Below are positions 3,001 through 45,040 of a stretch of DNA of 64,000 bases, in pieces. Source of the DNA: Lepidodermella squamata (lineage: Eukaryota; Animalia; Gastrotricha). Where the stretch lies: the NCBI GenBank assembly GCA_047495785.1, contig JBLDXI010000002.1, positions 2,294,001 through 2,358,000 of the forward strand, written 5' to 3'. The position numbers and the translations under genes were made by a program. Within the stretch, counting starts at the first letter, position 1; each line of letters opens with the position of its first letter. The notes beneath the pieces are model-generated. The model ran no database searches. It saw only the letters and a list, made by a program, of their open reading frames with translations, and was not told the origin of the DNA.

Positions 3001-3025
3001 CATGCCGAACTGGCCGCCTCAACAT
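1..3025 (-). CDS. ERMP1: ERMP1-like M28 metallopeptidase, copy A (runs off the window start)
   Basis: Exons 3025-2420, 2289-1645, 1592-846, 618-<1 with in-frame GT-AG introns. M28 motifs LLNAHYD, GASDD, FNGGEEN, NMEAGGSGG, IPSDTDFRIF, GYVYHN, followed by a multi-TM region and C-terminal domain typical of ERMP1/FXNA. Confidence 0.93.
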
Positions 3026-3127
3026 AACAAAAAATTAAAAAATCTAAAAAATTATAAAAAATCCGCCTTAATTTATTTTTTCAGGAAAATTACGATGAAA
3101 GCACTAAACAGCTGAAGATTTCGAATT

Positions 3128-6109: not shown

Positions 6110-7008
6110 GATAATATTTTCGACCTAATTTAAATGAAAAAAAGATGATAATGAAAATCCGAATAAATAGATACAACGAACCGTGATTTTATGATAATTA
6201 ACCCAGAGATGACGTGGGATGATTTCTGCGCGCTGCCTGCTAGGAATTTTAATCATGCAAAGCAGCAGCAGCTGAAACTGAGGACACGCACACACGAGTA
6301 ATATTATCACAGCATACAATGTGTACAATCTCTGGTTAAATTACGCGTCTTACCTCGCTTGACGTTGTTTACTACAACAATATTTCACGACGAGGTATAT
6401 ATATATATATGGGCACACAAAAGAGTAGGCAGAGTTCACGTCTTTTGTTATGCGAGAACAGCCGAACCAGGCGGTCAGATGAAACGGGGTCCTTAGATAA
6501 AATCTCACCGACGCCATAAAAATATTATTATTAAGGTGGATCAATTCATTCGGGGATATAAAAATAACTGTCTAGACTGGAAACTCATATATTTTTTTTA
6601 TTTTTTTCCAACTCAACCTTTCGAAATAATATTAATAATAATATCAATAACTCACAAAAAAATGGAATGAAGTCGTTGCAAGCTCATAAAATCAATTAGA
6701 AAATCACAAGTAATCCTAGAGCATATAAATCATCGATTTCAAGCAGTTGCAGCATCAAATTGAAAGAATCAATCAACAGTGGGCCGAAATTTTGCACTCA
6801 GATTCTTTTGACTCAGAAAAATTCAAACAAAAATGCATATAAATTAAAGAATTTGACACGAGATTTTGGTTGGAATAGATACTCAATTTTCGAATCATAA
6901 CCATGAATTAATTCGCACCGTATACAAATCGGTCTCAGCAATGAGCATTCAACGTTATTCGCATCTATTATAATAACAATTAAAAATATTGCGCATATTT
7001 TTGATGAA

Positions 7009-10000: not shown

Positions 10001-10178
10001 AGGGGGTGTGGTTCTCAATATCTAACGGATGATGACCGTTCATCTTCGAATTACGATTTCCAGCCAAGAGCTCCTCTTCATCTTCGCGCAAATATCGCAT
10101 GCCTTCTTCATTGCCGTCAAGATCGTGGCGACCACGCCCATTTTCGTAAGTGCTCCGTCCTGCATTAGCGCGAAGCAT
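7009..10178 (-). CDS. ERMP1: ERMP1-like M28 metallopeptidase, copy C (~1003 aa, 4 exons, intact)
   Basis: Exons 10178-9522, 9466-8822, 8770-8030, 7977-7009 (3012 nt). All M28 Zn-ligand motifs present (NCHFD, GASDD, AEEN, NMEA, YHT). Confidence 0.93.
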
Positions 10179-12095: not shown

Positions 12096-14290
12096 TCATA
12101 CAACCATTTCAAGGTTTTGAGTCCGCAATAAATCATCGCTTAATTGGTGTTTATGCTGCGACGACTGCTGCTGCTGCGACGGAGCGACCGGCGCCGTGGG
12201 CAGGACGTTAAGGCGAGGGGCGAAGGTGACTTGCTGCGGCGGCTGCGACGTCGCGTTTTGACTGCGGGCTCGTGCCAGCGAGTCGAGACTAGGCGAGGCA
12301 ACGCTGCCGTTAGCCGGCCGCATGGCACTTTTCATGACCAGTGTCGAAGTAGGGTATTGCTGTGCGAGCTGCTGTTGCTGCTGCTTCTGCACCTCGTACT
12401 GCATAGGCCCGGACAGGGTGCCGTAGCCGGGCGGCACCATGCGCGATGTCTCATATGCTTGTTGGTAATGCTGCTGTTGCTGTTGCATCAGCGAATAGGC
12501 AAGAGCGGCATTGGTCATTGGAGGACCGCCTTGAACGCTGCTGCTTCGCGAGCTTGCAACTTCACTCGTTACTTGGGCCCAAGTTACTTGACGAGTTGCT
12601 GTTAACAAAAATTAGTTGAAAAATAATCCTCCTTATATATTTGAAATATCTAACCATTATTATCAGGCTCGCGCCGAACCGGTCGAGGGGGCGGTGATTC
12701 AACGGCTGTTTGAACGATTCTAGCCCGTTCAACGCAGGTGCCATTACTGAGCAAGAAAGAGGGCGGGGGAGGTGGCTGTTGTTGTTGTTGATGCTGGCAA
12801 ACTTGTTGCTGCTGCTGCTGAATCGATCTCGCAGACAAAATCTGCTGATGATGCGGATCGGCGAAAAATGCTCGAAGCCTGTCGTTCGACATGTGCTGTT
12901 CGAGGTGAGGTTGAAGCTGCTGCTGAGCCGCTTTTTTCTGAGCACTATGAATCGGGCAGTCGTTGCTAGCCGACGGCTGCTGTTTATCAGACCCGCTCAG
13001 GGCACTCGCCACCGTCGCCGCGCTTCCCTCACCGTCCGACGAATTAGCTGGCGAGATTTGCTGCTGAGGCGTTGTTTGCAGTTGAAATTTAACACTGCTC
13101 GCCTGCCGAGGCAGCGTGTGATGCAGCTGGTCCGGCCCTTCCGTGCTCGGAGTTTGATGAACCAGCGACGACGTTGTATTAACCGTGTGGTCTGACGAGT
13201 GGTCGGAGGGCGATGAATTTCGAAGATCGCCGTCCAGTTGCCGGTGGCCACTGGTCGGCGTCATCACCGTCGTGTCATTCGCCGTCGAAATATTCCGGGC
13301 TAAACTCGCGTGGTCACCAACCGGGGGTGAAGAGGCGTCGAAACCAAGCGCCTTCATCTTCCGCTCAGCCGCTTTCCTCGCGTTGTAGGTCCGGCCACGA
13401 CCGCGCCGCTTCACCACTACTACAACGGTGATAATAATAATCGAAGCGCCACCGGCCGCGCAAATCAAAATCACAACGATTGTCAAACTTCGGCTATCGC
13501 GGACAAATGCGGTTTTCGCAAACGCTTCCAGCGCGTTTTTGTCCGGTGAGACGAAGAGTTTCAGGGTGACTAGCGCCGACTCGCCGCGGTTATTCGTGAC
13601 CTGAACTCGAATTTCGTACAGAGTCGATTCGATAGCGACTAAATCGTCTCGCAGTGAGATAACGCCAGTTTTTGGGTCGATGACTAAATCGCCGAGTGGC
13701 GGCTCGATCGAGTCGATGCGGAACGAAATCGGGCTGGTTGAGTCGTCAACGTCGTAGGCAACGACCCGGCTAACCATAACACCGGCGCCGACCGGGGTCG
13801 ACATGATAACTGTGTCGTTTTTCGCGTTCGGGAACAGCACAACCGGGCCCTGGTGGTCGAAAGGCACGACGTGAAGGCTGGCCTGAACGCGGGAATACGC
13901 GGCTCGATTTTGCGAATCGCCGGCTAGAATCGCGAAATTCAACCGCCCATTCACTGGGTCGAGGGATTTCTGAAAAATTTCTGCGGCCGCAACGTAGATT
14001 TGCCCGGTAACTTCGTCGATTCGAATGGTTTTGCGCACCAACTCATCGCCGCTTATAAAGTACCGCACGTTCGACTGGTTCAGCTTGTCGTCGGAGAAAT
14101 CTTCATCCGCATCGATTGCTACGACGGGTTTCCCGAGTTCTGAGCCTTGCCTAGCGCCGTTTCTCGCGAAAAACGCGTAGGAATTGCGTTCGAACGTCGG
14201 TAGATTGTCGTTAATATTGATGATATTGACCTGGAAAGCGGTCGACCCAGTCAAACTCGGCTGGCCTCGATCAATCGCCATAATTTCCAT
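12096..14290 (-). pseudogene. 5'-truncated duplicate of the protocadherin (end of EC5, EC6-7, TM, cytoplasmic tail)
   Basis: Near-identical to 18918-21112; exons 14290-12655 and 12598-12096. Lacks signal peptide and EC1-4 because of the duplication breakpoint; frame still open from an internal ATG. Confidence 0.85.
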
Positions 14291-14291
14291 G

Positions 14292-17000
14292 TTAAACTGT
14301 TACCAGTCTAGGGCTCGTCGGCATTTGGAACACAGACGGCCAGTAACTGTCTTTAACGGTTTCTTCCGATGTATCCACGTCAATCCACCATGTTTTGCCG
14401 TGGACGAAAGACGTGACCGGGAAAAAGTAGGGTAAACCGCAATATGGGTGTTTTTCCGGGTCTTCCTCCGTTGAACACGCAATTCTCGCCTGGTCCAAGT
14501 AGAAGTCCAGTGGTTTTGAATGGCCTCTTAATGGCGAAATTCCGTTGAAATCGATAGGCACAAACCAGATACCTGAGCGTATCGGCGCGTCGACCTCACG
14601 CCCGGCATCAACTATTCGCTGCAAGGTAAGTTGAGCAAACGATCGTTGAACGTGAACTCCGTAATATTTGGTCGGATCAATGCTATAAGCATTGCCGAGA
14701 GGTGTCAGCAGGACAGTGAGCAAAACGAATCCGGAAATTCCGCCGATCCATTGAACTAGCGGCAAAATATGCCCACCGCTTAAATAAACCAAGGATGACT
14801 GAAAAAATCGAAAAAATTAAGGAGGCTTTCTGTTAATTTCAATAAATTACGTGGAATAAAAGCAGAATAGCGATTGCGATCAGTACAAGGACAGCGACGA
14901 AATATTCCGGGTTGACATGAGCCCCAGTCCGGCCCAGAATCGGAATAAAAATTTCGAAAATCGCATCGGTGATGTACACGAAATAAACAGTTGGGACACC
15001 GGTCAAGACGGCATGTCTAATGAAAAGCGTAAATCCACCTGTCGGTCGATTCGTACGGTTTCCAAGTGGAACCAATTTGTCCATGAACCAGGCTGAAATC
15101 AGCGGTAAGCCGACCCAGATGAATAAAATGTAGGATGAGGTGATCGAAAACAGAGATAAAACAACAATTCCGAACGAGCAAATCACAAGAGCAGCATCGA
15201 ATGAAATGTCGTAAGTCCGTTCGCAATTTTGAGCGAAGTTTGTAGACACGCATTTTGATAACATGTAATACTTGAAGAAAAACGCGTGGACCAAGAAAAC
15301 GGTAGCTATTGCAGGCAATATGTAAATCGGCACGATAAGCCAGGGTCGAGAGTACCAAGCCATGCACGAAGAAGTAGATGACATGAAGCTAGCAATAGCG
15401 AAAAGAACAACTCCAGCAGCAGTGATGGCTTGGCAATGAGCTGCGATAGCAGACATTAAAATTTGTTTATAAGAAGCCCCGTCACGTTGCCGAGATCGGT
15501 AAATCAAGGTGAAAACTCTCCAAACAGTTCCGAAGACGGCTAAAAAATTCAGCGGCAATCCAACGGTGCGAAAAGGATACACGACGAGAAACTGAAATAT
15601 AAGTCATTTCAAATCACATAACAAGTGAGAGTAGTTTTCTTACCAGTGAAAAAATATCAAAATAGACGAGTTTCTCGCCGGACCGATCATTTGGATCAGC
15701 AACAGGTGGCATTGCACCCAAATCGCTAGATGCCAAAGTTCGCACCAGTGCTAATATGTTTACTCCAGCACGTTGTAAAGTGCCATCTGAAATTCGATCT
15801 GGTGTGTCATAACGAGTATGGTACACGAATCCGTTCGAGTAAAACGCGAAATCAATTCCAGGCAAGTGACCATAGTCACGGAATATTCGATAATCCGTAT
15901 CCGATGGAATAATTCCAGATTGGAACACTTCTTGTCCCAAAACACTGGCAAACGGGTATGGAGCAGATTCGGCGTAGGCACGGACTAAAATTGGAGTGGC
16001 AGGTCCAGGGCCGGTTTGAAACATAATTTCACGGCCTCCAGCTCCGGCGGCTTCCATATTGATGAAAGCTCGAATATGCTTAGCCCAAGGATGCCCAGTT
16101 CCCTCGCTTCCACCGGAAGCATGGGATGTTCCAGCCACAAATCCGTTGCTCGCTTGCAAGATGTTTTCTTCTGCTCCATTGAACAAAAAAATAACTGAGT
16201 TTGGTAGAGCCTGCTTAGAAGCGAGTAAAGCTCTCAATATTTCCAGCATTAATGCACAGCTAACAGCATCGTCACTCGCACCGACCGTCTAAAACAGATT
16301 TTTCAGTTGAGATAACATAGATGCAAGACCTCGAAGAGCTTACCTCAAAGTATGAATCAAAGTGGCAATTAAGGAGTAACGCATGGTCTGTGTTACCCGA
16401 TGCAGGATCTAATCTAGCAACAACGTTGCTCACATTGGCGTAAACCGACGTAAATCCAGACGGGAAGCCCAACTCGAAAAATCCAGATACATGATCAGCA
16501 GCAAATGACAATTTGTGAGGAGATCTATCAGTCAATTGTTTGCGCAGGTCATCTAGTTCTCCAAGAAGCCAATGCACAGCAATTTCATCGGCTGCCATCG
16601 TACCAGCCATTCGAACCCCGAAGCTAGTCAAATGATTCAAGTGTTTTCGTGCGCGGGCAGCAATAAACTGATTCGAATCTAGAAACGACTTCGCCAAGTT
16701 TTCAGGCGATACGCCTAATGAACTCGCGTCCGGGACGTCAGGAACTCGGTGCATTTCATTTCTCACAGCGAACTTGATTATGCAGAGAACTATCATCGAA
16801 ACCGCTATATACTTCCAATTCAAGGGGGTGTGGTTCTCAATATCTAACGGATGATGACCGTTCATCTTCGAATTACGATTTCCAGCCAAGAGCTCCTCTT
16901 CATCTTCGCGCAAATATCGCATGCCTTCTTCATTGCCGTCAAGATCGTGGCGACCACGCCCATTTTCGTAAGTGCTCCGTCCTGCATTAGCGCGAAGCAT
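14292..17000 (-). CDS. ERMP1: ERMP1-like copy D, C-terminally truncated duplicate of copy C
   Basis: Exons 17000-16344, 16288-15644, 15591-14851, 14798-14292. The last exon ends RLVTV* at the junction, losing ~155 aa. Catalytic and TM regions intact; may be a pseudogene. Confidence 0.85.
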
Positions 17001-18917
17001 ATTAACTATTCCCTAAAGAAAAAGCGAAAGGTTAATTATGAGATGGCAACCAGCACCCGGAGCTTTTCGAGCGCATTACACTTTAAGAATGTACAGTACA
17101 AACGTTGGTAATTATGAAGAGAAGCAACCATCTCAGCAAGTAAGCAGGACGAACCCAAACACTAAAGCCTGTACACGTTAACGACCACTCAACTCAATCC
17201 CTTTAGCTCATGCACCTGGTTGCTGGCCAAAATGCCGGCAGCAAAGAGAAATTGCGCGGGTAATTCAAATTCATGAAGGTCACATCACAATCTTGGACTA
17301 TCCTAAAATTAAGCATTTTTTAAACAATAATGATTTTATTTATTGTGCAATAAGGCTAAATAAGAGATTTTAAGATGAACATTGTTTTCGGTTTCAAATT
17401 TCAAAGTTTAAACCCGTTTCGATTTTCGATTTTGTCGACTTCTGACGATTCTTCCGACTAAGCAAATTGCCGTTCAATTGAGGGAGAAGAATTGCAAGAT
17501 TTTACACATGCATGGGTAATGGAATTCATCAATGCTAGCATACTGTGCAAATGCCTAAATGTTGGTCGCGAAATCACTGCTGGCATGGAAGCTATGTAAG
17601 CTGTCACCTGGGTTTTCAGGACTTGCCACGCTCTGTACATTGTTTCCCTCTGTTCAATAAAGTTTTGCATAAGTATCAAAACATCAATACCTTCTGCTGA
17701 GCGTTTTTCGCTGGTCTTCGCTCGCCGGTTCATCATCAAACGATAGAAAGAAATAATTCAAAGAAACAGCATCATTTGGGTTTTTACTTATAAGCCGGCC
17801 GCTGAGACGAATCATTTTCAAATACCACACCAGTTCTTGCTTAGCAAATTGCTCCTCTGTTTTTTAACTTTTATTGAATTGCAAGCTGAAAATTTTTCCC
17901 GGAATGCACACCGCATAAAAATTCCGGCCACCGTAAATCAAAATGATCATTCTCCATTCTCCGTTTGGTAAAAATCGAAATGTGCTTCCCAGATCTGATG
18001 TGTTTCACGAATATACCACAATTTCGCAGTGCATCCATGGCGTTGTAAAATAAAATAGGCGCCACCCTTTTAGCTCATGTGACGTTGGAACGTAATTTGA
18101 AGGCTGATATTATCTCGAACTTTTGAGGGGGAACAACTGTAGAAATCGGGTCGTTAGTTTGATTGAAGTCGTGCCAATTCAAGGGCATATGTCTCCTGAT
18201 CTGGGCCGATTGGCTCGTTTTACATAATGACGTTATTAAAAGCCTCATGAGACCGCCTTTTTCATTCAGCCAGCATCGATTCGATTCATCACAGCATCGG
18301 ATTTTACACTGGAATTATATTGAAGTTAACGCAAAAAACGGCAACGAATGGCAATTATTTCAGTTTTATTTCATTCATTTCATCAATATCACTTCTCTTT
18401 CTCATAAATAAAAAACAAAGATGGCGAAGTTTTCGATTTCGCTTTGTATATAATCAACAATGGTGTTCACAAAGGAGAGCAGGCATCTTCGAATAGAAGA
18501 GGTAATATAGGCAAAAAGGACACGAAAATTGCCAGCGTGAAAAGTCTCATCATCTTCATAAAAAGTGAGCTGTTCGATGTCATCATCAAGCGTGGATGTG
18601 GAAGGCCACTTGAAATATACCTACTATTATTTATATATAAAGCAACATCGTTTTCAACAAGAGATGCGTGCGAATTTCTGTACAGTCGTCATCTTTTTCG
18701 CTTCAAGGCCACGACATTCTCATAGAATATGATATTATTGGTACAATTTCATGCGTAAAAATGATAGAGATCCTTATATTAAAAAACTATGATGAGAGGA
18801 ATAAATGTACTGTAGATCGCTTGTACAATACATTAGCACGTCGCCGAATACGTAACATCGATACGCATTTTAGAAATGATTATACATACACGCACGGAAC
18901 TATACATCGAATCACCA

Positions 18918-21900
18918 TCATACAACCATTTCAAGGTTTTGAGTCCGCAATAAATCATCGCTTAATTGGTGTTTATGCTGCGACGACTGCTGCTGCTGCG
19001 ACGGAGCGACCGGCGCCGTGGGCAGGACGTTAAGGCGAGGGGCGAAGGTGACTTGCTGCGGCGGCTGCGACGTCGCGTTTTGACTGCGGGCTCGTGCCAG
19101 CGAGTCGAGACTAGGCGAGGCAACGCTGCCGTTAGCCGGCCGCATGGCACTTTTCATGACCAGTGTCGAAGTAGGGTATTGCTGTGCGAGCTGCTGTTGC
19201 TGCTGCTTCTGCACCTCGTACTGCATAGGCCCGGACAGGGTGCCGTAGCCGGGCGGCACCATGCGCGATGTCTCATATGCTTGTTGGTAATGCTGCTGTT
19301 GCTGTTGCATCAGCGAATAGGCAAGAGCGGCATTGGTCATTGGAGGACCGCCTTGAACGCTGCTGCTTCGCGAGCTTGCAACTTCACTCGTTACTTGGGC
19401 CCAAGTTACTTGACGAGTTGCTGTTAACAAAAATTAGTTGAAAAATAATCCTCCTTATATATTTGAAATATCTAACCATTATTATCAGGCTCGCGCCGAA
19501 CCGGTCGAGGGGGCGGTGATTCAACGGCTGTTTGAACGATTCTAGCCCGTTCAACGCAGGTGCCATTACTGAGCAAGAAAGAGGGCGGGGGAGGTGGCTG
19601 TTGTTGTTGTTGATGCTGGCAAACTTGTTGCTGCTGCTGCTGAATCGATCTCGCAGACAAAATCTGCTGATGATGCGGATCGGCGAAAAATGCTCGAAGC
19701 CTGTCGTTCGACATGTGCTGTTCGAGGTGAGGTTGAAGCTGCTGCTGAGCCGCTTTTTTCTGAGCACTATGAATCGGGCAGTCGTTGCTAGCCGACGGCT
19801 GCTGTTTATCAGACCCGCTCAGGGCACTCGCCACCGTCGCCGCGCTTCCCTCACCGTCCGACGAATTAGCTGGCGAGATTTGCTGCTGAGGCGTTGTTTG
19901 CAGTTGAAATTTAACACTGCTCGCCTGCCGAGGCAGCGTGTGATGCAGCTGGTCCGGCCCTTCCGTGCTCGGAGTTTGATGAACCAGCGACGACGTTGTA
20001 TTAACCGTGTGGTCTGACGAGTGGTCGGAGGGCGATGAATTTCGAAGATCGCCGTCCAGTTGCCGGTGGCCACTGGTCGGCGTCATCACCGTCGTGTCAT
20101 TCGCCGTCGAAATATTCCGGGCTAAACTCGCGTGGTCACCAACCGGGGGTGAAGAGGCGTCGAAACCAAGCGCCTTCATCTTCCGCTCAGCCGCTTTCCT
20201 CGCGTTGTAGGTCCGGCCACGACCGCGCCGCTTCACCACTACTACAACGGTGATAATAATAATCGAAGCGCCACCGGCCGCGCAAATCAAAATCACAACG
20301 ATTGTCAAACTTCGGCTATCGCGGACAAATGCGGTTTTCGCAAACGCTTCCAGCGCGTTTTTGTCCGGTGAGACGAAGAGTTTTAGGGTGACTAGCGCCG
20401 ACTCGCCGCGGTTATTCGTGACTTGAACTCGAATTTCGTACAGAGTCGATTCGATAGCGACTAAATCGTCCCGAAGTGAAATAACGCCAGTTTTCGGGTC
20501 GATGACTAAATCGCCGAGTGGCGGCTCGATCGAGTCGATGCGGAACGAAATCGGGCTGGTTGAGTCGTCAACGTCGTAGGCAACGACCCGGCTAACCATA
20601 ACACCGGCGCCGACCGGGGTCGACATGATAACTGTGTCATTTTTCGCATTCGGGAACAGCACAACCGGGCCCTGGTGGTCGAAAGGCACGACGTGAAGGC
20701 TGGCCTGAACGCGGGAATACGCGGCTCGATTTTGCGAATCGCCGGCTAGAATAGCGAAATTCAACCGCCCATTCACTGGGTCGAGTGATTTCTGAAAAAT
20801 TTCCGCCGCCGCAACGTAGATTTGCCCGGTAACTTCGTCGATTCGAATGGTTTTCCGCACTAATTCATCGCCGCTGATAAAGTACCGCACGTTCGACTGG
20901 TTCAGCTGGCCATCGGAGAAATCTTCATCCGCGTCGATTGCTACGACGGGTTTGCCGAGCTCCGAGCCTTGCCTAGCGCCGTTTCTCGCGAAAAACGCGT
21001 AGGAATTGCGTTCGAACATCGGTAGATTGTCATTAATGTTGATGATATTGACCTGGAAAGCGGTCGACCCAGTCAAACTCGGCTGACCTCGATCAATCGC
21101 CATAATTTCCATGTTAAACGTCTTGATATGTTCGAAATCGAACGACCGTTTCGCCTTCAACATGCCGCGATTATCGGCGGAGATAATGTCGAAATATTCG
21201 CGAATGCTCTCAGGCCGGATTTCGTAGGTCAACTTAGCGTTATCGCCGATATCGAGGTCTTCGGCGACGAGTTCAGCGACAATGTAGCCGGGCGGGTTGT
21301 TTTCGGAGATGTTAACGGCGAACGGCGCATTTCCGGACTGGCTTCGGTAGAAAAAAGTCGGAGCGTTGTCGTTCATATCGCCGATTCGAATGACGACAGT
21401 TTTGCTGGCTGAGAGCGGCCCGCCTTGAGATCCTTTGCCCTTATCGGCACAGGAAATTTCGATCGGAACTTCCTGGGTCTTTTCGCGGTCGAAAGAACGC
21501 TTTGGTGTAATACTAAAAAGAGGAAAAAAATAAAATTAAAACAAAATTAAATATTCAAAAAATTAAAAATTAAAAGAAATATCAAAAATTATAAAAAGAA
21601 ATTAAGGAGGATTTTTCAAAATTTATTTTAAAAATTTTCTAAAATTATTCATGAAAAATTGGAATATTCAAATTACCGGTATGTTTTAGGATACATAGGA
21701 TCCAGAGCGAAGTCTGTAGTGTTGATACTGCAGGCCACCTCGCCGCCGCCATTTGTATCCGGATCTCGGACAATAACCAGTGCTAAGGTTTTCGGCTTCT
21801 CCGCATTTGGCTCGAGATTTTCCATCAAAACCGGCCCAGACCTGCCATTCGGGTCCGTATACTGGTCGCCGATGCTTTTAACCGTAATCGTCGGCGGGTT

Positions 21901-22965
21901 GTCGTTAACATCAGTCACGGTGACTACAACAGTCGCCGACGAAGTTCGACCCCGGCCTAGGTTATCAACAGCCAGGACTTTGAACCGGAATTCCTTGTTA
22001 GTTTCGTAATCAAGCGGCAGTAGCGCCGAGATTCCGCCATTTGAATGATGCACGTAAAAGTACTGCTTAGCAACGGCGTCACTGTCGTCGATTTTGTAGA
22101 TCAACTGCGAGTTGACGCCATCGTCACGGTCGACCGCTTTCACGGTAACAAACGGCTCCTTGTATGACCGGTTTTCGACCAGCTCCGCCGTGTAAATCGG
22201 CCGGCTGAATTCAGGGCTGTTATCGTTGTCATCAGCGACAGAGACATTTACATTAAGGCGGCCTTCCAAGCCACCGCCGTCGACTGCGCGAATCTGGAAG
22301 CGATACGTCTCGACCTGTTCACGGTCTAGCGGTTTCTTGAGCAAAATTTGAACTTCAGCCGGGTCGATCGGCGACTGCTTCACGTCGAAAGTTTCCGACT
22401 CGTCGTAGATAGAAAACGCGCGAACAGCGTTGTCGCCAAAATCGGCGTCATTCGCGCGGAACGTTGCGACAACATCGCCGACACGCGCCGATTCACTGAC
22501 GGCGATCGACTCGGTCGGGCGGGCGAAAGACGGCGCGACGTCATTCACGTCGTAAATGTGAAGAGTCAACGTGCCGACTATCATATCGCCGCTACCTGAC
22601 GCTGATTCGTTCCGCCTGATTGAAATATCGACGTTTTTCGAGCACGGGTTAACATTTTTGCCAGCGCATAGCTGTTCCCGGTCTAACCGGCCGGCGGCTC
22701 GGACGACGCCCGTCGCTTGGTCGATTGATAACAACCGGGCAAGTTCGGGTTGTTCGTTACTTTTCGGGTCGTTATTCGCAAGGATTGAAAAAATCGTGTA
22801 TTTAGTTGCGAAACGGGAAAATTCTCGATCTCGGGATAAATTGATAATTTCGTGGCCTATCGCGACTTCTTCGTTAACATTGGCCTGGGCGCTGAGGGCG
22901 CAGTTGACTGCCGAGATAACGGCCCCGAAAGCAGCGAGCCGAAGCAGCAGGACGACGATAATCAT
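18918..22965 (-). CDS. Protocadherin-like protein (~1275 aa; signal peptide, 7 cadherin repeats, TM, Q/S-rich tail)
   Basis: Exons 22965-21677, 21512-19477, 19420-18918 (3828 nt). Linkers DVNDVAP, DDNDNSP, DVNDNPP, DMNDNAP, NINDNLP; LDRE/LDYE and AxDxD motifs; EC1 Cys pair (CAGKNVNPC); TM LTIVVILICAAGGASIIIITVVVVV followed by KRR. Confidence 0.92.
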
Positions 22966-36860: not shown

Positions 36861-38113
36861 TATCGGGCTCGTAATCGACCGGTACCAAGCCATTTATTGA
36901 GTCTGCATGTGGCAATATGACGGCTCCAGGGTCTCTAGCCACTGAATAGCCACGGCTCTCCGTCTAACTAAAGACTTGCACTTGTTAACTGCGGCTTATT
37001 GGTGTATATTCCAAGTTTGAAATGATGAAAAGATGAAAAGGATGAAAGGATGCGAAAATCGGGATGAAAACCGGAGTGGTGGAACCAAAACCGGGTCTGG
37101 CCAAAGCCGGGGCAAACCCGTGTCATTTTTCGCACGAGACCCGTTACGTATGGCGATACGCCACAGCCAGGTCGAAAGCCGGGCGTCCCGGTTCAGTTAG
37201 TCTCACCTTACATAACGGGTCTCGTGCGAAAAATGACACGGGTTTTATGGATTAGGTTTTTAATATAGGCGAAAACCGTGTCAGGTCTTAGAGTGAGGTT
37301 GAAGGGGGGGGGGGGGGGGGGGTAACTTGGCCGGTGCGTGGGGTTCGGCGGTGAACCATCTGGCAGAAACTAGGTCGATGATTCATCACGCCCTCTCATG
37401 TCTAGGCCAAATTTTAGAGCGCATTTCGCACGTTAAACATCGGCCAAGTTACCCCACAAAATGCAGGTAATTACCGCTCGCGATTGCGACATCAGTTTTC
37501 AGGTGTCATTCGAAAGGTATCACCGAGAGGAGTCTGTCTGTGAAAACGGCGTTTTCCTCCGATCTCAGAATTCCTTGTTATAAAAGCACAAAATCTCAGC
37601 GCCTATAATGAACGAGTTTGTTTATTGTCATTTTAAAACGATTTCCGAATTCGGTGAAAAGGGAGTTGTAGCTCAGGTGGCAAGGAATGTTCCTATGAAA
37701 AAAATCGTGAAAAAAGTTTTTCTCGATGTGAAATCGACCATAAGGCGACTTTTACGGCCAAGTTACCCCATGCCACGGTGTATATGCCGTCAAATGCTTG
37801 TGTTTTCGTGAAAAAACATGTGGCCACGCGAAAGAAATGAAACAAGGACTCAACAACTAAATTTTAATGCACAGTTTTTTTCTAATTTAAAAATCAACGG
37901 GATCGAATTGCGTGATGAGCCTTTGACCTTTAGAATCCTTGAAAGACGGAGATTCTTGCTACGAAAATTTCAAAATTTCTGAGGATGTGCATCTTTTCCA
38001 CCTTTTAAATCAAGGAATTTAAATTAGCGTGCATATTTATTGTTTAACGACAACAGACAAGTGCGTGCGTCCGATCTGTTTCATCATTGTCTATGATGAA
38101 ACTTGAATGTGTA

Positions 38114-38930
38114 CCGTAAGGCGGTCTTACTTCGGACAAAAACGTGTTTTTGTGGCTTAGTTTTTCGAGGTGAACGAATTTTTTGACGGGCTTTATGTCA
38201 AAAGATGCGCCTTGAAAAACTGCATATTCTAGTATCAACTCCGGTAAGCAAATAATTTTTCCCGTACAGGTATTAAAGGAAAACTGGTCCGGCTAACTTC
38301 GGACACAACTGGGGTAATTTCGGACAGCTCAATGTGAATATTTAGATTGGGGTCAAAGTTCACATTAAAGCGAGATAAAATTAGTGAGCAGATTTAAGAA
38401 AAAAAAACTTAAAAAAAAACCAAATGCATGATGAGGGATTCGAACCCTCAATATTGAATTGTGCTCCCAACGCAGCTTAGTGCTGTTCTCAATAAAATAT
38501 GGAGTTTAAAAAATGTCAAGGTCAATTGACATCTTTTTTAATTTCCCGTAGTTTGAAGCTGTCCGAACTTACCCGGGACAAAATTTATTTTCTAAAGTAT
38601 TTCCTGATCAAAATTTTCGTTAAAAATTTGTTTGAACATGACAGCATTACTAAATCGATGGTGCTCTATCTTTTCCGCTTCTCTCCACGAAAAAATACCT
38701 ACCTGTGAAAAGTTAGCAATTTTGGGTCGCGGGACATGACTGCCAAGAAGTTAGACTATTCTTCGCATACTTATCTGTTTTCAATGTTTCTGGTGTCATT
38801 TGAAAGCCAAGACTCAGGGCTATCTTTTGCAATTTGAACGGTCTCTATATTCACCGGGGTTGAGGAGAAATTCCAGTTCAAAGTCAAAAGTGTCCGAAGT
38901 TACCCTGTCCGAAGTAAGACCGCCTTACGG
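38114..38930. mobile_element. MITE with perfect 25-bp TIRs and TA target-site duplication
   Basis: TA-CCGTAAGGCGGTCTTACTTCGGACA ... TGTCCGAAGTAAGACCGCCTTACGG-TA; internal TTCGGACA/TGTCCGAA copies at ~38298, 38319, 38560 and 38891. Confidence 0.9.
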
Positions 38931-39273
38931 TATTTTACACACACCTATGAACCCCACTTATATATTATAATGAATCATATTAAATGCGATGAAAAAATTG
39001 ACCCTCTAAGTATTCAAGATAAGATTATGTGTAATACTTCTTGGTAAAACTAAAATATTCATGTATTCATCGTATTACGCCTCCGCATGTTTGTCATCGT
39101 AGGGTGCAAAATGATTCAACTTTTCTTCAATTCAAGATATAAAACCTTCCTAAAATTCACTTCAAATTCACTTTACATAGCCTCTAACAACAAACACCCC
39201 AAGTTCTTAAATTTGAAATTTGGAGAGTTTCCATTTCCTGCATAAAAGCATTATATTTCTACAGTAACGCAAC

Positions 39274-42000
39274 ATGCCCGCTGTGCTATCTGCTCAAACC
39301 GGTAGGGTTATTTTTACATTTGCCTAGTTTGATCTTATTCTTGCGAATCAATGCATTTTCCAGGCTCTGTCACCAACGGCCGAGCTGGTACCGATGATGT
39401 AAGAACGCTGTTTCCCTACAAATCAATTCACAATTCATGTTTTCTACAGCTTGTAAAAAATGGCCGCAAATACAATGAAACACAACCCACGAAAAAAGCT
39501 TATATTGCTGCTCATGATTTGAAAGACAAAGCTGGGACGATTAAAGAGGTAATTGAAACTTCATGCAAGCGACATCATATTTGCAAAATATCTGATCTCC
39601 ATAGTATCAACTGCTGATAAATACTAATATTGTCTTCATGGTTGAAGTCCTCGACGTGATCACAGCAGATTCGCATACGACTGTTGTTACTGAAAGCTAC
39701 GCCATTGGTAAGTGACTGACATGACAAATTTTGATGTTGGGATAAGCAGCTTCAGAGTCGACGTGTTCAAGAATGTTTTCAAAATGAAGACATATTTAAA
39801 AAAGCTGAAGGCTATGAGCCGCTTCATAAGCGTTAATCTACGATCTGAATTTGAAAAGGACATTCTAGAGATTTGGAATACGTTGAGACTGAAGTTGCTG
39901 TTATAAATTCAACATCATCTTTTGAGTGCAACCTCACTATAAATTCAGCTATAAATTCATATCATTTCGCACAGGCTCGGATCTTTCATCTTATTTGGCT
40001 CAATCGAAAGAACCCATCTCAGAAAATATGATTCGAATTTGGGCTGCTCAGCTCGTGATAGCAATTGGATCTCTTCATGATCTTGGAATCGTTCATAGGG
40101 ATATACGACCCTCGGTATGAATTGATCTTATCATTTTACTTACGTCCTGCTATAACTCGGGCTTGTTTTGCAGAATATTTTTATCACTGGTAATGGCGCT
40201 TTGAAACTCGGAGATTTTGGGCTGACAAAACGGAAATGGTTAGGAATCAAACTTCGCTTGAATAATGTAACTAATTTTGTCATGTTGCTATAGCTTGGAG
40301 TCACTTCCGAATCTCGAAAAGGAAGAAGCAGTTTACGTCGCTCCGGAGCTATGGAGAAATCAGAGCTTCTCTGAAAAATCCGACATTTGGGCTCTGGGAG
40401 TAACCTTATTCGAATTAGCTAGCTTAAAAACACCAGCTTTCACAGTAGAATTGGGCGAAACTTACCAAATGGCGATAGCAAGGTTCGCAGATTTTAAATA
40501 AATCATGCTCCAAAACATCGATATTTCTTATTATTCAGGTGGAAGAATAGGTCTATACCTGAGATTTACAGTTCAAATCTTCGCAATTTAATCCTGTCTA
40601 TGCTCAATGATGACCCTGCATTGAGGCCGTCAGCTCAACAAATTCTTTCACACGACATTTTAACCGATCAAGTAAAAGAAGCCTTGGAATGCTCCGCTGA
40701 ATGCTCAAGAAACGAAATGAATGGTAAGTCATGAAACCATTCTTTTTAATTAATTTAATTTGCGATTTTGAAGGTTGTGACAAGAAAAGCGATTCTTTTG
40801 AAAGCTCAACGATCTCTTCCCTGCCAAAGCAAATATTAGCAGTCTCTTCTAGCTCAACCGTTACGCCGGTAAGCCTTCAATTTCATCTGAACTAGTGATT
40901 TATCTTCAAAAATCTTCTGCGGTTTCAGAATAACAGGAATCAAGGGCTAAGCGAGGAGAAAAGAATCGGGATTCAAAATCAGTTGATCCTGATTTTGCAT
41001 GCTCATAAGTGTGAAAAACGAGATGCTATGGCAAAGTCGATTGCAGCAAGTGTTGCTGGTGCTGCAACAAACCCGACTTTTCCGAACTGTAAAGTCGCTT
41101 TTTGTCAACGAATGAAAGAGGTGATAAACCACCTGAGAGGCTGCAAGGATGATAAGTCTTGCACCTGTAAGTTCAAGTTTTGTATCTAATTTCGAATATT
41201 ACCTGAGTCGATTTTAGACAAAAGCTGCTTGTCAACGCGGCAAATAATTGTACATTGGCAGAAATGCAGGGACGAGGAGTGTCCGGTATGTAAGGAGGTT
41301 CGGATGCTGAGTCTTTTGTCGAAGCCTGTTTTCGACTCGAAAGTTTTGCGAAAAACAACGAGTGATAATATCCCTGGAGTTCATTCTGGCTCCGTCATTC
41401 CCGTTCAAGCTAGTACATCAACCTGGCAGAAAGAATTCGGCACTGAAGCTAGGCAGGCTGCTATCGATAAATTTATGGAAGAATTAAGGGTGAGCAGCGG
41501 CGGCTACAGTGACTTGGAGGCTTTGCGCAAGTTTGCCGTTCAAACCGAAGCTGAAATTTTCACCCGATCAGATAAATCTGAGAGGTACTTCTTTTTGCTG
41601 GCTGAGAAGTTGTACACTGCTTCGAAGGAACTCTTGCATACTGGAGGAAACGGTACGTGTTGATGCAATTTTTCCAAACACGTTTTTATCTTTTTATTTC
41701 TTCCTTAAAGTGGAAAATGTAAATGGCGAGACGTCCCAATGCCCGATTTGTTACTTGGACATCGTGAAACTCGGTTGCGGTTCTAGACGATTGATTTGTG
41801 GACATGGTAAATTCAAAGTCGAATTTCTTTACCTCATCCTTATATCGATTTATTTTTTAGCTTACCATATGGAATGCATCAACCGCTGGCTGAGAGAGAA
41901 GGACACTTGCCCAACCTGCAGAGCTATTGTGCGGTCGCATTCAACAAGTAAACATGTAGTTTCAAGCACTTCAAGGCATGAAGTGATGAGCAGTGCTTAA
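39274..42000 (+). CDS. Chimeric NEK-like Ser/Thr kinase - TAZ1 zinc finger - KIX - RING-H2 protein (~615 aa, 13 exons)
   Basis: Exons 39274-39301, 39364-39398, 39450-39548, 39605-39707, 39975-40114, 40174-40238, 40294-40482, 40539-40723, 40774-40868, 40929-41166, 41218-41652, 41711-41806, 41861-42000 (1848 nt, phase-consistent GT-AG). Kinase: HRDIRPSN, KLGDFG, YVAPE, SDIWALG, RPSAQQIL. TAZ: QLILILHAHKC...HWQKCRDEECPVC. KIX: YFFLLAEKLYTASKEL. RING-H2: CPIC...CGHAYHMECINRWL...CPTC. Confidence 0.82.
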
Positions 42001-42935
42001 AATTCGAGATATCATTTGAATATCTATTATTATTCAAGGGTTATAAGACCTACCTAAACAAATTCATTCTAGCATATTTATGTGTGGGCGCGGAAGTGCC
42101 TCATTACACCCGATTTAACTCACCTTATCTAAAGACACTTTGGGTTAGTAATATAGTATGATTTAACTTCGTTGATGGTGATGAATATATACCATATTAT
42201 GGTTTTGACCGTGAGATGTAAATTCAAAGTGATAAAAGTCTGTTCGAGATCACCACTTTTATTGGCACAAATTTGGCCGCAAATACTTCTACTACTGGTG
42301 TGACTTGCGACTTAATATTCGTCAAATATGAATGTTTTATTCGCAGAAAATACATCTACAGATTTTTTCCGTTCGAAAATTCTAGAAAATTTCTGTTATT
42401 TCTGCGGATTCAAATAAAAAAATAAAGAAAATTTAGCCCTAATTTTCCTTCAACAAAACAGCCAGAACAAGTGTACAGGGCATAATATAGGGGTGCTTAT
42501 AAAGATGCTCGAAAAATGAGAAGAAAAAAACTGGCTTGAGTCGTCATCAATTTCGCCTAAAACAGATAATCTTTTAGCGGAAATTAAGGAGGAGCCAAAT
42601 TTTGTAAATTCTCGACAATTCAAATTTTAGCGGAACCAAATACCTATGCTGTAGCGGAACAAGATTATCAGAAACGGAACCAAATGTCATCATTTATTGG
42701 CAACAACACTATAATAACGCCAAATCAGTCAACTTTCACATTTTTCAGACCTCGCCCATGACCCACGACAACGTGCCTGTGCTGCTGCAGTTGATGTTGC
42801 AGGAAACGCTGCGGCTGAGTGGCTGGCGAGTGACTGATTTATTGGGCTCGTTAACCTTGAGCTGGAACCTCAATATCGTCGACGACGAAACCGACGTCCG
42901 ACGCCGCTGTCAGTCTCGCTGAAAGTTCCAGAAAA

Positions 42936-43063
42936 CGAATCTGGGACAAATCTCCCATCTTAGATCTTAGTCGAATCTGGTTATATTTGAGTCTAAACCA
43001 TCTGCGAAAATATTAGACGAATCTGGGACAAATCTCCCGTCTTTACCGAATCTGGCTATTTTG
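42936..43063. repeat. Short degenerate tandem repeat (CGAATCTGGGACAAATCTCCC x2, CGAATCTGG x4)
   Basis: Units at 42936 and 43018, partial units at 42972 and 43047; probably a transposon remnant. Confidence 0.6.
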
Positions 43064-43741
43064 AGCTTTTTTGTGCTCTTCGCGCCTTTTAAATGCGGGA
43101 CATATTAAATACTGTCGCTCTAAACGAACAATTAGTCGATAATAAAGTACGGACATTGCTTTTTTGCCTCGCAATATTTTATTTTCTCCCTAACCATGAG
43201 GAATTTTTGCAGCCGTTTTCGCCAATCGATAGATTTAGTGCGCGGTAATCTTCCCTCTACTCTCATTTGAATCGGATTCTATTAGCAGAAAAATTGGCGG
43301 TGAAAATGCTTCTTGGGATTTTGGCAAAACTGCCCATTTCGGGTATAATTTGGGTGTTCCTTTTATAGGATTGAACCCATAGAGCTGTTTGAAAACATCT
43401 TTAGTCGGAAATAAAATAATATTACCCAATTCCCGAGGAAATAGTCGGTATCAACTATGAGTGTCGTGCTTACGCGTGGAAACCACCTTATAATATCAAG
43501 TCCACTCATCGCGAGCTAATTTGCCAGCGATAACAGTGCTATTTGTCGCAAGATTCGATACGCATGACTGTCTGCGTGGTTTATGAATGACACAATATAA
43601 CTAAGTATAACAGGTAAACGTCCATCACCGGATACGTTATTATTTGGTACAGCTAATTATCTGCTGCTGATTCATTGCTTCACCGAATAAAAACTACCAA
43701 GAGGCAAGAAGTCATGATCACATTTCCGAGAAATTATACAA

Positions 43742-45040
43742 ATGGTCAGAGTAATTTTAGCAATATTACCACTTCTAGCCTTTCTGAATTCAGCCGATTC
43801 CACCTCCGATTGGATAGCAGTTGGGGGTGATTTCGAACACTCTGGCTACAAAGCAGAATCACTTGGATCTCTAAGTAGCATCGAGGTCGCTTGGAAGTAC
43901 TACGGCTATCGAAAATTTTCCGGCCTGGGTGTACTTACTTTCAAATCGAAAATCTACCAGATCTCAGGCGATGGATATCTCTCGATTTTGGACGCTAAAT
44001 CCGGCAAAAAGTTGAAAGAGTTCGCTGTCTGCCCCGACCAGGTTCCAATGAACCAATTCATCGACCCTGACAGTTCAACTCTATTCCTATCATCTCTGGC
44101 GAAGCTGTACGCTATCAATATTACTTATGACCATGAAAAGCTGCTCTGGTCGCGAGATATTGAAATGATCGTCGATATCGTGCCTAGTTTCAGCCTGAAC
44201 CGAGTTTTCGTCGCGACCGGCCTCGACCGAAAACTGCTAGCCCTAGACATGACTACAGGCGGAACAATCCAGAATTTCACCCCATCAGGCCATGCATTAT
44301 GGCTGTCACTTTTCAACAAAACTCGACTTCTGGCAATCTGCGATGATCAATCAGCCGGGCAAAGCTTGAAGGAGTACGATTCGGCTGGAACTGGGGCAGT
44401 TCTCTGGAGCGTCTCGTTGCCAAATGCTCACAAAGTTTTCCACGGCCCGATAATTTACGACAACTTCGCTTTTGTTAACAACAACGGGAATCTAAGTGCT
44501 GTAGATTTGACCTTGCATAACATTTCGTGGACAGCTTATACGCCTGATTGCGACAGTGGTGAACTACTCTCGTTGTCTCGAGGCGACTGGTACCTGTACA
44601 GAAAATGCAACGCTGACGATATTTTCAAGTTTGACATCATCACTGGCCATCTCGTAAATTCGTATCGTCTACCGAAAGATGTTTTCAACACCTTGGAGGC
44701 GAAATCGATAATTCTCGACGATTGGCTAATCTCTCCCCGCGAAAAAGGGCTGGACATAATTGATAAGCTAAGTGGGCAGGTTAAAGCTGCGTTCAATGGC
44801 GATGGTTCGTCATTTGGCCCAGCTAGCTGGGCTTATTTCGATGGGATGATTTACGCAGTTTCTACTCGAAATAACGTCATCTATGCGTTTAAGCCATCTT
44901 CAAGCACTTCAATAACTCCGGTATCAACTTCGACTCCATCCGCTCAAGGTCAACAGGGCAAGGGGAACGGTGCAACAATTGGTTATTCAATCGACGGAGC
45001 TTTAGCTATTCTCTGCTTCATCATGCTTTCTTTCTTGTGA
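43742..45040 (+). CDS. Single-exon secreted, probably GPI-anchored PQQ/BamB-like beta-propeller protein (432 aa)
   Basis: Signal peptide MVRVILAILPLLAFLNSADS; DWIAVGGDFEHSGY; repeated blades (LSILDAKSGKKL, LLALDMTTGGTI, LSAVDLTLHNISW, FKFDIITGHLV, IIDKLSGQV); S/T-rich stalk and terminal hydrophobic tail. Confidence 0.75.
   Translation: MVRVILAILPLLAFLNSADSTSDWIAVGGDFEHSGYKAESLGSLSSIEVAWKYYGYRKFSGLGVLTFKSKIYQISGDGYLSILDAKSGKKLKEFAVCPDQVPMNQFIDPDSSTLFLSSLAKLYAINITYDHEKLLWSRDIEMIVDIVPSFSLNRVFVATGLDRKLLALDMTTGGTIQNFTPSGHALWLSLFNKTRLLAICDDQSAGQSLKEYDSAGTGAVLWSVSLPNAHKVFHGPIIYDNFAFVNNNGNLSAVDLTLHNISWTAYTPDCDSGELLSLSRGDWYLYRKCNADDIFKFDIITGHLVNSYRLPKDVFNTLEAKSIILDDWLISPREKGLDIIDKLSGQVKAAFNGDGSSFGPASWAYFDGMIYAVSTRNNVIYAFKPSSSTSITPVSTSTPSAQGQQGKGNGATIGYSIDGALAILCFIMLSFL

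What the first reader, a model, noticed from the sequence alone, without database searches (positions are those of the whole stretch)
39274..42000. NEK-like kinase fused to CBP/p300 TAZ1 and KIX and to a RING-H2
One phase-consistent 13-exon frame links the four domains. TAZ1 then KIX occur in the CBP order and match CBP motifs closely (EKRxxIQxQLxLxLHAHKC; RQIIxHWxxCxxxxCPVC; YxxLLAEKxY), but bromo and HAT domains are absent. I know of no described protein with this architecture. Inference: a captured CBP N-terminal fragment acts as a docking platform for transcription-factor activation domains, coupling them to phosphorylation and ubiquitination (a co-activator decoy or TF-degrading ligase).
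Basis: partly seen in the sequence, partly recalled or inferred. Interest (0 to 1): 0.82.

Follow-up and report, generated by a model that had tools for sequence, protein, structure and literature searches.

The report
Pseudokinase-TAZ1-KIX-RING ubiquitin ligase gene
A small invertebrate expresses one spliced gene that joins a degenerate protein-kinase domain and copies of the two transcription-factor docking domains of the coactivator CBP/p300 (TAZ1, KIX) to a ubiquitin-ligase RING finger. I found this design in no public protein or paper, and it would let a ligase pick targets by their activation domains.

Summary
A 13-exon, phase-consistent GT..AG gene (39274-42000, + strand) encodes a kinase-like domain, a TAZ1-type zinc finger, a KIX domain and a C-terminal RING-H2.

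- **Domains:** each domain was confirmed exon by exon.
- **Transcript:** spliced contigs of a public run show the predicted joints, including kinase exon 8 to linker to TAZ exon 10. Kinase and TAZ-KIX-RING therefore sit on one transcript.
- **Family:** the gene belongs to a family in this 121-Mb genome. Six loci carry kinase+TAZ+KIX+RING, down to about 31-55% identity, and all modules are under purifying selection (dN/dS 0.13-0.54).
- **Short forms:** kinase-less copies arose by a 1.35-kb deletion.
- **Origin:** the TAZ-KIX part is an old clade, not a recent copy of the animal's own CBP. It is shared with unnamed TAZ-KIX-RING proteins on animal contigs from metagenomes.
- **Kinase:** the N-lobe has no recognisable glycine loop or VAIK lysine, and divergent paralogues lose HRD/DFG/APE. 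It is probably a pseudokinase, and "NEK-like" is weak.
- **Public data:** no public protein I could reach joins a kinase to TAZ-KIX.
- **Function:** a ligase for activation domains is inferred, not tested.

The scan noted a paralogue of this design before on other DNA (s1-407499).

The parts
39274..39398 (+). Exons 1 (39274-39301) and 2 (39364-39398): start codon and short N-terminal peptide. This part is shared with the kinase-less paralogues.
   Evidence: First in-frame ATG after a stop. RNA joints 39301/39364 and 39398/39450. DNA homology to L024/L025.
39450..39707 (+). Exons 3 (39450-39548) and 4 (39605-39707): presumed degenerate kinase N-lobe (beta2-beta3-alphaC, beta4-beta5). It has no canonical GxGxxG, and the motif KKAYIAA stands where VAIK is expected.
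   Evidence: No Pfam match even at E<=10. The motif KKAY[IM] is conserved in paralogues L022, L028 and L030. RNA joints 39548/39605 and 39707/39975.
39975..40723 (+). Exons 5-8 (39975-40114, 40174-40238, 40294-40482, 40539-40723): kinase C-lobe with HRDIRPSN, DFG, APE, DIWALG and the subdomain XI Arg.
   Evidence: Pkinase pieces in profile order. PDB hits are ULK4, NEK1/2/7, DMPK/MRCK and ULK1/2. dN/dS 0.24-0.38 among paralogues.
40774..40868 (+). Exon 9: Ser-rich linker between the kinase and TAZ.
   Evidence: RNA joints 40723/40774 (side 60) and 40868/40929 (side 65) tie kinase exon 8 to TAZ exon 10. The exon is conserved in all close paralogues.
40953..41303 (+). TAZ1-type zinc finger, split by intron 10 (41167-41217). 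All twelve His/Cys ligands of the three HCCC sites are present, and there is a 13-residue insertion in the first loop.
   Evidence: zf-TAZ 37.8 bits. PDB TAZ1 of CBP/p300 at E 2e-9 to 1e-8 against TAZ2 at about 1e-3. The C-terminal helix aligns with CBP TAZ1.
41418..41642 (+). KIX domain (three-helix bundle) in exon 11.
   Evidence: KIX_2 34.4 bits. The family profile hits CBP KIX 1KDX/1SB0 at E 1e-10. In the AlphaFold model, helices 68-92, 99-116 and 120-141 have block pLDDT 76-90 from residue 71. The top Foldseek hits are CBP/p300 KIX, TM by target 0.70-0.79.
41740..41922 (+). RING-H2 (C3H2C3), split by intron 12 (41807-41860): CxxC...CxH..H..C...CxxC with the conserved Trp.
   Evidence: zf-rbx1 and zf-RING_2 on exon 13. 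The ligand pattern was read. RNA joint 41806/41861. Homologous RING in P0003, P0005 and P0014.
41998..42000 (+). Stop codon TAA. RNA coverage falls to about 1 just beyond it.
   Evidence: bin 41984-42124.

Best explanation
This is one expressed gene of a lineage-specific family of RING-H2 ubiquitin ligases. Their substrate-recognition part is a diverged copy of the N-terminal TAZ1-KIX module of CBP/p300. In one branch of the family a kinase-derived domain, probably catalytically dead, was added in front. Shown: the gene structure, its splicing into one transcript, the four domains, their conservation under purifying selection, and the family history (TAZ-KIX-RING first, kinase added once, then lost again in some copies by deletion). 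Inferred: TAZ1 and KIX bind disordered activation domains of transcription factors as they do in CBP, the RING recruits an E2 and ubiquitinates what is docked, and the pseudokinase serves as a regulatory or extra docking scaffold in the way Tribbles pseudokinases hand transcription factors to COP1.
For: Gene and transcript: 13 phase-consistent exons. Spliced contigs in X1 match the predicted introns, including 40723/40774 and 40868/40929. X1 has no coverage in the 267-nt intron 4, and coverage starts near 39200 and ends near 42000. DNA run X2 shows no joints. Contigs on exons 1-4 must come from this copy, because paralogues share no close DNA there. Domains. All 12 TAZ zinc ligands and all 8 RING ligands are present (read). 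The KIX equivalents of Tyr658, Lys662, Ala654, Leu652/653 and Lys606 are kept (roles of Tyr658 and the groove residues from PMC2717803). Conserved architecture: six loci have kinase+TAZ+KIX+RING in the same order. This kinase type occurs nowhere else in the genome. Selection: dN/dS is 0.24-0.38 for the kinase C-lobe, 0.13-0.26 for TAZ-KIX and 0.15-0.54 for the RING. History: tree and deletion breakpoints in introns 2 and 8. Pseudokinase reading. Repeated, apparently separate fusions of TAZ(-KIX) to ligase modules support the functional logic: frog RING-TAZ-KIX P0154, fish TAZ-KIX-SOCS box P0006 and plant BTB-TAZ BT2 with CUL3 (PMC7468283).
Against: No binding, ubiquitination or kinase assay exists, so targets are unknown. 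The window's own copy keeps HRD, the catalytic-loop Asn, DFG and APE, so residual or atypical (WNK-like) kinase activity is not excluded. The beta3 assignment rests on reading, not on a fold, because the joined protein was not modelled. KIX alpha1 groove residues Leu599 and Leu603 are Ala here, so ligand preference may differ from CBP. The RNA evidence is short assembled contigs. No single molecule spanning exon 1 to exon 13 was seen, and some joints come from paralogues. The kind of run X1 is a guess in its record and was inferred here from its splicing pattern. Gene conversion among paralogues could distort the tree that places the short forms inside the kinase group.
Confidence: 0.55

Rival explanations
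1. Dual enzyme. An active NEK-like kinase phosphorylates transcription-factor activation domains docked on TAZ1/KIX, for example creating a pKID-like phospho-motif. The RING then ubiquitinates them.
For: The window copy keeps HRD..N, DFG, APE and subdomains IX and XI. The KIX residues that read pSer133 in CBP (Tyr658, Lys662) are kept (PMC2717803). The kinase C-lobe is under purifying selection. Kinase-plus-RING ligases that target bZIP factors exist, such as KEG (PMC3697954).
Against: There is no recognisable glycine loop or VAIK lysine in any of the six paralogues, and the N-lobe matches no family even at E<=10. The catalytic loop has Arg for Lys. Divergent paralogues L028 and L030 have HRE, DIG and PKD/PRE yet keep the domain, so its conserved role does not need catalysis. 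NEK assignment is not secure: the best PDB hits are the pseudokinase ULK4, then NEK1/2, and DMPK/MRCK/ULK for another exon.
Confidence: 0.15
2. Coactivator decoy. The protein mainly competes with CBP/p300 for activation domains and so damps transcription. The RING serves its own turnover or has no substrate-directed role.
For: It carries only the docking modules of CBP and no bromodomain or HAT. Several paralogues are expressed. Short TAZ-KIX-only predicted proteins exist in other animals.
Against: The RING-H2 is intact with all ligands and the E2-contact Trp. It is under purifying selection and is the one feature shared by the whole clade, including the metagenomic relatives. That would be unexpected if it were dispensable.
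Confidence: 0.15
3. Gene-model artefact: two neighbouring genes (a kinase, and TAZ-KIX-RING) that are transcribed separately.
For: Kinase-less TAZ-KIX-RING genes exist in the same genome and are expressed. No single long read across the whole gene was available.
Against: Exact GT..AG joints link exon 8 to exon 9 and exon 9 to exon 10, with 60 and 65 letters on the shorter side. Exon 8 has no stop and leaves the frame open in phase 1, which exon 9 completes. The same order and spacing hold at six loci. The short forms are explained by a deletion of exactly the kinase exons.
Confidence: 0.03
4. A decaying duplicate without function (pseudogene of a recently expanded family).
For: Some paralogues are damaged: L023 has a 1.7-kb insertion in exon 10, and L026 has frame breaks.
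Against: The window copy has an intact frame through 13 exons, is transcribed and spliced, and shows dN/dS well below 1 in every module.
Confidence: 0.03

Closest known systems
CBP/p300 N-terminal region (TAZ1 then KIX)
   Same: Same two domains in the same order. TAZ1-type zinc sites are all kept. KIX has the CBP-type fold and keeps the alpha3 groove residues, including the Tyr658 and Lys662 equivalents.
   Different: There is no bromodomain, HAT, ZZ or TAZ2, and the protein ends in a RING-H2. It forms a separate clade on a long branch from all CBP/p300, including this genome's own CBP. It has a 13-residue insertion in TAZ1, and Leu599/Leu603 are Ala.
Unnamed TAZ-KIX-RING-H2 proteins of 305-314 residues on animal contigs in ENA metagenomes (P0003, P0005, P0014)
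   Same: Same clade (100/99) and the same TAZ-KIX-RING-H2 order and RING type. Neighbouring genes on their contigs are animal-type.
   Different: They have no kinase-like domain, were called as single open frames, and are only 29-35% identical.
Plant BTB-TAZ proteins (BT1-BT5, MdBT2), CUL3 substrate adaptors
   Same: A TAZ domain is joined to a ubiquitin-ligase module, and transcription factors are ubiquitinated and degraded. The TAZ domain is needed for binding at least one of them (PMC7468283).
   Different: The ligase module is a BTB adaptor for CUL3-RBX1, not an own RING. There is no KIX and no kinase, and the origin is unrelated.
Predicted vertebrate fusions: bullfrog 'CREBBP-like isoform X3' (RING-TAZ-KIX, P0154) and soldierfish 'p300-like' (TAZ, three KIX matches, SOCS box, P0006)
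   Same: TAZ-KIX of CBP type joined to a ubiquitin-ligase module.
   Different: The RING is N-terminal and C3HC4/TRIM-like, or a SOCS box stands in its place. P0006 was not in the tree; P0154 was found after the tree was built. There is no kinase. Both are automatic gene predictions that I did not verify.
Tribbles pseudokinases with COP1; KEG (RING-kinase-ankyrin-HERC2-like)
   Same: A kinase-derived domain works with a RING ligase to destroy transcription factors (PMC7923445). KEG carries a RING and a kinase domain in one chain and targets the bZIP factor ABI5 (PMC3697954, PMC5385374).
   Different: In Tribbles the ligase is a separate protein. KEG has other substrate-binding repeats. Neither has TAZ or KIX.

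Membership tests
Protein kinase superfamily (Pfam Pkinase PF00069) | C-lobe catalytic and structural motifs HRD..N, DFG, APE, and subdomains IX and XI | tested here: met
   Exons 5-8 match Pkinase in profile order, and exon 7 alone scores 33.6 bits against a cut-off of 31.7. HRDIRPSN, DFG, APE and DIWALG were read.
Protein kinase superfamily, catalytically competent | Glycine-rich loop GxGxxG and the beta3 VAIK lysine | tested here: not met
   No such motifs appear in exons 1-4 or in the equivalent exons of L022, L028 and L030. These exons match no Pfam family at E<=10. The alignment of beta3 is by eye, and a fold of the joined protein was not made.
NEK kinase family | Closest similarity to NEK catalytic domains over the whole domain | tested here: inconclusive
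   For exon 7 the best hit is ULK4 (1e-6), then NEK1 and NEK2 (5e-6 to 9e-6). For exon 5 the best hits are DMPK, MRCK and ULK2, with no NEK listed.
TAZ zinc finger, TAZ1 type | Three HCCC zinc sites, and a better match to TAZ1 than to TAZ2 of CBP/p300 | tested here: met
   zf-TAZ 37.8 bits against a cut-off of 25. All 12 ligands were read. TAZ1 structures score 2e-9 to 1e-8 and TAZ2 about 1e-3.
KIX domain, CBP type | Three-helix bundle with a hydrophobic groove on alpha1/alpha3, and the Tyr658 and Lys662 equivalents | tested here: met
   KIX_2 34.4 bits against a cut-off of 25.6, while PF02172 KIX scores 19.2, below its cut-off of 27. The family profile hits CBP KIX at 1e-10 and MED15 KIX at 5e-6. 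The model's top fold hits are CBP/p300 KIX, TM by target 0.70-0.79. Note that the profile includes this genome's own CBP row.
RING-H2 E3 ubiquitin ligases | C3H2C3 ligand pattern with correct spacing | tested here: met
   CxxC-x13-CxH-x3-H-xx-C-x10-CxxC was read across exons 12 and 13. zf-RING_2 scores 28.9 bits on the exon 13 half alone.
RING-H2 E3 ubiquitin ligases | E2-dependent ubiquitin transfer | not testable with these tools
   This needs an in vitro ubiquitination assay.
CBP/p300 (KAT3) coactivators | Bromodomain, CBP-type RING/PHD, HAT (KAT11), ZZ and TAZ2 after KIX | tested here: not met
   The frame ends 350 bases after KIX at a RING-H2 and a stop, and RNA coverage ends there. A separate locus with TAZ, KIX and a second TAZ (C2:2726755-2730775, L029) groups with the CBP fragment P0002, which has a bromodomain and CBP-RING.

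The most novel reading that the evidence does not exclude
An animal lineage evolved, and then expanded to a dozen or more genes, a family of natural 'activation-domain degraders'. These would be RING ligases that read transcription-factor activation domains with CBP-derived TAZ1 and KIX modules and compete with the coactivator for the same motifs. A pseudokinase would be added as a switch that gates substrate access. The expansion and fast N-terminal turnover could reflect diversifying control of many factors, or a conflict with foreign transactivators.
Probability: 0.3. Interest if true: 0.8.

Novelty: new variant of a known kind. Interest (0 to 1): 0.62.

Why it matters
CBP/p300 TAZ1 and KIX are the textbook receivers of disordered activation domains. 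A natural protein that wires these receivers directly to a RING ligase would mean that activation domains can double as degrons read by a coactivator look-alike. Plants reach that principle with BTB-TAZ adaptors, and engineered degraders imitate it. The family offers natural variants with and without the kinase-like domain, including a clean deletion, to test what a pseudokinase adds to a ligase. It also shows that CBP docking modules have been joined to ligase parts several times, apparently separately.

Tried and rejected
- **Whole-protein searches or folds:** not done, because the spliced model may only be used exon by exon. The kinase class and the state of the N-lobe therefore rest on pieces.
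- **Pfam on exons 1-4 and on the single-exon N-termini of L028 and L030 at E<=10:** nothing found.
- **phmmer of exon 11 alone against PDB:** found only the TAZ1 end, not KIX. The family profile was needed.
- **Foldseek E-values for the KIX model:** weak (0.065), as expected for a small helical domain. The ranking and TM-scores were used instead.
- **ESM Atlas look-alikes:** only CBP-like TAZ/KIX clusters, no kinase or RING set.
- **Literature searches for the architecture:** no description found.
- **Linkage with the downstream beta-propeller gene:** rejected. Its paralogues are only about 35% identical and are not adjacent to the other family loci.
- **A mobile-element carrier for the dispersed copies:** homology between copies is confined to the gene plus a short downstream block. 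A MITE-like element lies upstream, but it is not part of the duplicated unit.
- **Identity of the animal:** not tested here. Earlier notes of this scan suggest the gastrotrich Lepidodermella squamata.
Full report
**What is there**

The stretch 39274-42000 on the + strand reads as 13 exons with GT..AG introns. Eleven introns are 50-62 bases long; intron 4 is 267 bases. Phases fit throughout. The exons are 39274-39301, 39364-39398, 39450-39548, 39605-39707, 39975-40114, 40174-40238, 40294-40482, 40539-40723, 40774-40868, 40929-41166, 41218-41652, 41711-41806 and 41861-42000.

The window lies in a 121-Mb, 151-contig animal genome, at contig C2:2294001-2358000. Cadherin and ERMP1 genes sit nearby. 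Earlier notes of this scan take the animal for the gastrotrich Lepidodermella squamata. I did not test that.

- **Kinase C-lobe.** Pfam finds Pkinase pieces in profile order in exons 5-8.
- **TAZ.** Pfam finds zf-TAZ in exon 10, running into exon 11. The TAZ part matches solved TAZ1 domains of CBP/p300 at 2e-9 to 1e-8 and TAZ2 only at about 1e-3. All twelve zinc ligands are present, and there is a 13-residue insertion in the first loop.
- **KIX.** Pfam finds KIX_2 above its cut-off in exon 11. A profile of the family's exon-11 equivalents hits CBP KIX (1KDX, 1SB0) at 1e-10 and MED15 KIX at 5e-6. The alignment keeps the equivalents of Tyr658, Lys662, Ala654, Leu652/653 and Lys606, while Leu599 and Leu603 are Ala (roles of these residues in PMC2717803).
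- **KIX fold.** An AlphaFold model of exon 11 gives three helices at residues 68-92, 99-116 and 120-141; block pLDDT is 76-90 from residue 71 to 140 (68 for residues 61-70). Its best fold matches are CBP/p300 KIX, with TM by target 0.70-0.79.
- **RING.** Pfam finds the second half of a RING-H2 in exon 13. The full C3H2C3 pattern with the usual Trp spans exons 12 and 13.

**One transcript**

Of two public runs that hold the stretch, X1 shows contigs that skip the predicted introns with GT..AG ends. X2 covers the introns and shows no joints.

- The joints include 40723/40774 and 40868/40929, with 60 and 65 letters on the shorter side. These tie the last kinase exon to the linker exon and the linker exon to the first TAZ exon.
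- X1 coverage is nil in the long intron 4 and in the bin just upstream of the start, and it drops after the stop.
- Exons 1-4 have no close DNA copy elsewhere among the loci fetched, so their spliced contigs come from this gene.
- Some other joints carry a few differing letters and come from paralogues.
- A loose end at 40931 matches the exon-9 equivalent of the short paralogue L024, so that gene is expressed too.

The limits are that these are short assembled contigs, and that X1 is labelled RNA only as a guess. Its behaviour supports that label.

**The family**

The genome holds many relatives.

- **Close paralogues with a kinase.** Three loci on C7, C16 and C11 keep kinase, TAZ, KIX and RING at 65-100% identity per exon. 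The C11 copy has a 1.7-kb insertion in exon 10.
- **Divergent paralogues with a kinase.** Two loci (C2:2157600 and C24:1447000) keep the same order at about 31-75% identity.
- **Kinase distribution.** This kinase type occurs at these six loci only.
- **Close copies without a kinase.** Three copies (C46, C29 and C7:1486200, the last with frame breaks) have exons 1-2 and 9-13 but no kinase.
- **More distant TAZ-KIX-RING genes.** These lie on C6 and about 9 kb upstream of the window.
- **The animal's own CBP.** It is probably the locus at C2:2726755-2730775, which has TAZ, KIX and a second TAZ.

Among the four close kinase-bearing copies, dN/dS is 0.24-0.38 for the kinase C-lobe, 0.13-0.26 for TAZ-KIX and 0.15-0.54 for the RING. 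All modules are therefore kept by selection.

**History**

A tree of the exon-11 region was built from 52 rows. These were the own-genome copies plus public hits that cover the region, with near-identical cluster members left out.

- All RING-bearing proteins of this genome, together with the metagenomic proteins P0003, P0005, P0008 and P0014, fall in one clade (100/99). It sits on a long branch apart from 39 CBP/p300 rows.
- Those 39 rows include the genome's own CBP, which pairs with the CBP fragment P0002.
- The TAZ-KIX module was therefore not copied recently from the host CBP.
- The metagenomic relatives are TAZ-KIX-RING proteins of 305-314 residues on contigs with animal genes. They have no kinase.
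- The kinase-less copies L024 and L025 nest inside the kinase-bearing group.
- DNA alignment shows that L024 and L025 equal the long form minus window 39403 to about 40756. The breakpoints lie four bases into intron 2 and about 17-25 bases before the end of intron 8, and the intron remnants are now read as codons.

The simplest order is TAZ-KIX-RING first, the kinase added once, and the kinase then lost by deletion. Gene conversion could blur this order.

**Is the kinase active?**

The window copy has HRD (with Arg for the catalytic-loop Lys), the Asn, DFG, APE and the later subdomains. Exons 1-4 match no family, even at E<=10. The single-exon N-termini of L028 and L030 also match nothing.

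No GxGxxG is present. The conserved stretch KKAY[IM] followed by Ala or Ser stands where VAIK is expected, in all paralogues. L028 and L030 have HRE, DIG (L030 only) and PKD/PRE in place of HRD, DFG and APE. A domain kept under selection without these residues is most simply a pseudokinase.

For the window copy alone, atypical activity cannot be excluded. The best solved matches to single exons are ULK4, NEK1/2/7, DMPK/MRCK and ULK1/2, so 'NEK-like' is not established.

**Is it known?**

- An exhaustive phmmer search of exon 11 against 1.84 billion representative proteins gave 80 hits, none above 45% identity.
- None of those hits matched the kinase exons in a local BLAST at E<0.1, and none of the 20 scanned with Pfam had a kinase domain.
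- A word-indexed search with the TAZ-KIX region of P0002 among proteins of 385-1223 residues gave 114 hits with precomputed Pfam lists. None had PF00069.
- Three literature searches found no description.
- Related ideas do exist: plant BTB-TAZ adaptors that ubiquitinate transcription factors (PMC7468283), a predicted frog RING-TAZ-KIX protein, a predicted fish TAZ-KIX-SOCS-box protein, Tribbles pseudokinases with COP1 (PMC7923445), and the RING-kinase ligase KEG (PMC3697954).
- This scan had already noted a paralogue of the same design on another piece of this genome (s1-407499) and a TAZ-KIX-RING gene (s1-402061). I reached the same reading from my own tests.

**Verdict**

The architecture is undescribed as far as these resources reach. 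The mechanism is a reasoned inference: a RING ligase that selects activation domains through CBP-type TAZ1 and KIX, with a probably inactive kinase domain as regulator or scaffold.

It is a new variant of a known kind, a modular RING ligase with a borrowed recognition module. It is not a new category.

**Left out**

Joining the exons into one protein for searches or folding was left out, by instruction.

Noticed in passing
window 38112-38932: An element of about 820 bases with perfect 27-base terminal inverted repeats lies just upstream of the gene. The region (38600-39022) has DNA-run depth in the thousands, against about 50-800 for the gene. Part of it recurs at 98% identity in locus L030. 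It is probably a MITE-like DNA transposon.
   Followed up: partly
L031 2700-5200 (G000:C2:2283700-2286200, about 9 kb before the window's start): At least one further, much more divergent TAZ-KIX-RING-H2 gene, and a KIX-like/RING fragment before it. The wider family is therefore partly clustered on this contig.
   Followed up: partly
L023 1077-2772 and L026 2130-3430: The paralogue on C11 has a 1.7-kb insertion inside exon 10. The paralogue at C7:1486200 has frame breaks in exons 10 and 11. Both are probably decaying copies.
   Followed up: no
window 40774-40868 (exon 9): The Ser-rich linker exon has very low synonymous divergence to the C7 and C16 copies (dS 0.05-0.11, against 0.13-0.54 in other exons). 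This could be gene conversion or a constraint at the nucleotide level.
   Followed up: no
window 43381-43745 and 42040-43380: A non-coding block of about 360 bases is shared with four paralogue loci, where it follows the gene directly. In the window it is separated from the gene's end by about 1.35 kb of extra DNA, probably an insertion.
   Followed up: no
window 43742-45040: An intronless 432-residue beta-propeller gene (PQQ_2 / ACSF4-propeller-like) belongs to a family of 30 or more copies in this genome at about 26-37% identity.
   Followed up: partly
window 771-10178 and 12096-22965: These are runs of minus-strand open frames for ERMP1-type M28 peptidase parts (duplicated) and for cadherin-repeat proteins. 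The blocks 12096-14290 and 18918-21376 look like tandem duplicates.
   Followed up: no
P0006 and P0154 (public proteins): Two automatic vertebrate gene predictions join CBP-type TAZ-KIX to ligase modules: soldierfish 'p300-like' with three KIX matches and a SOCS box, and bullfrog 'CREBBP-like isoform X3' with an N-terminal C3HC4 RING.
   Followed up: partly
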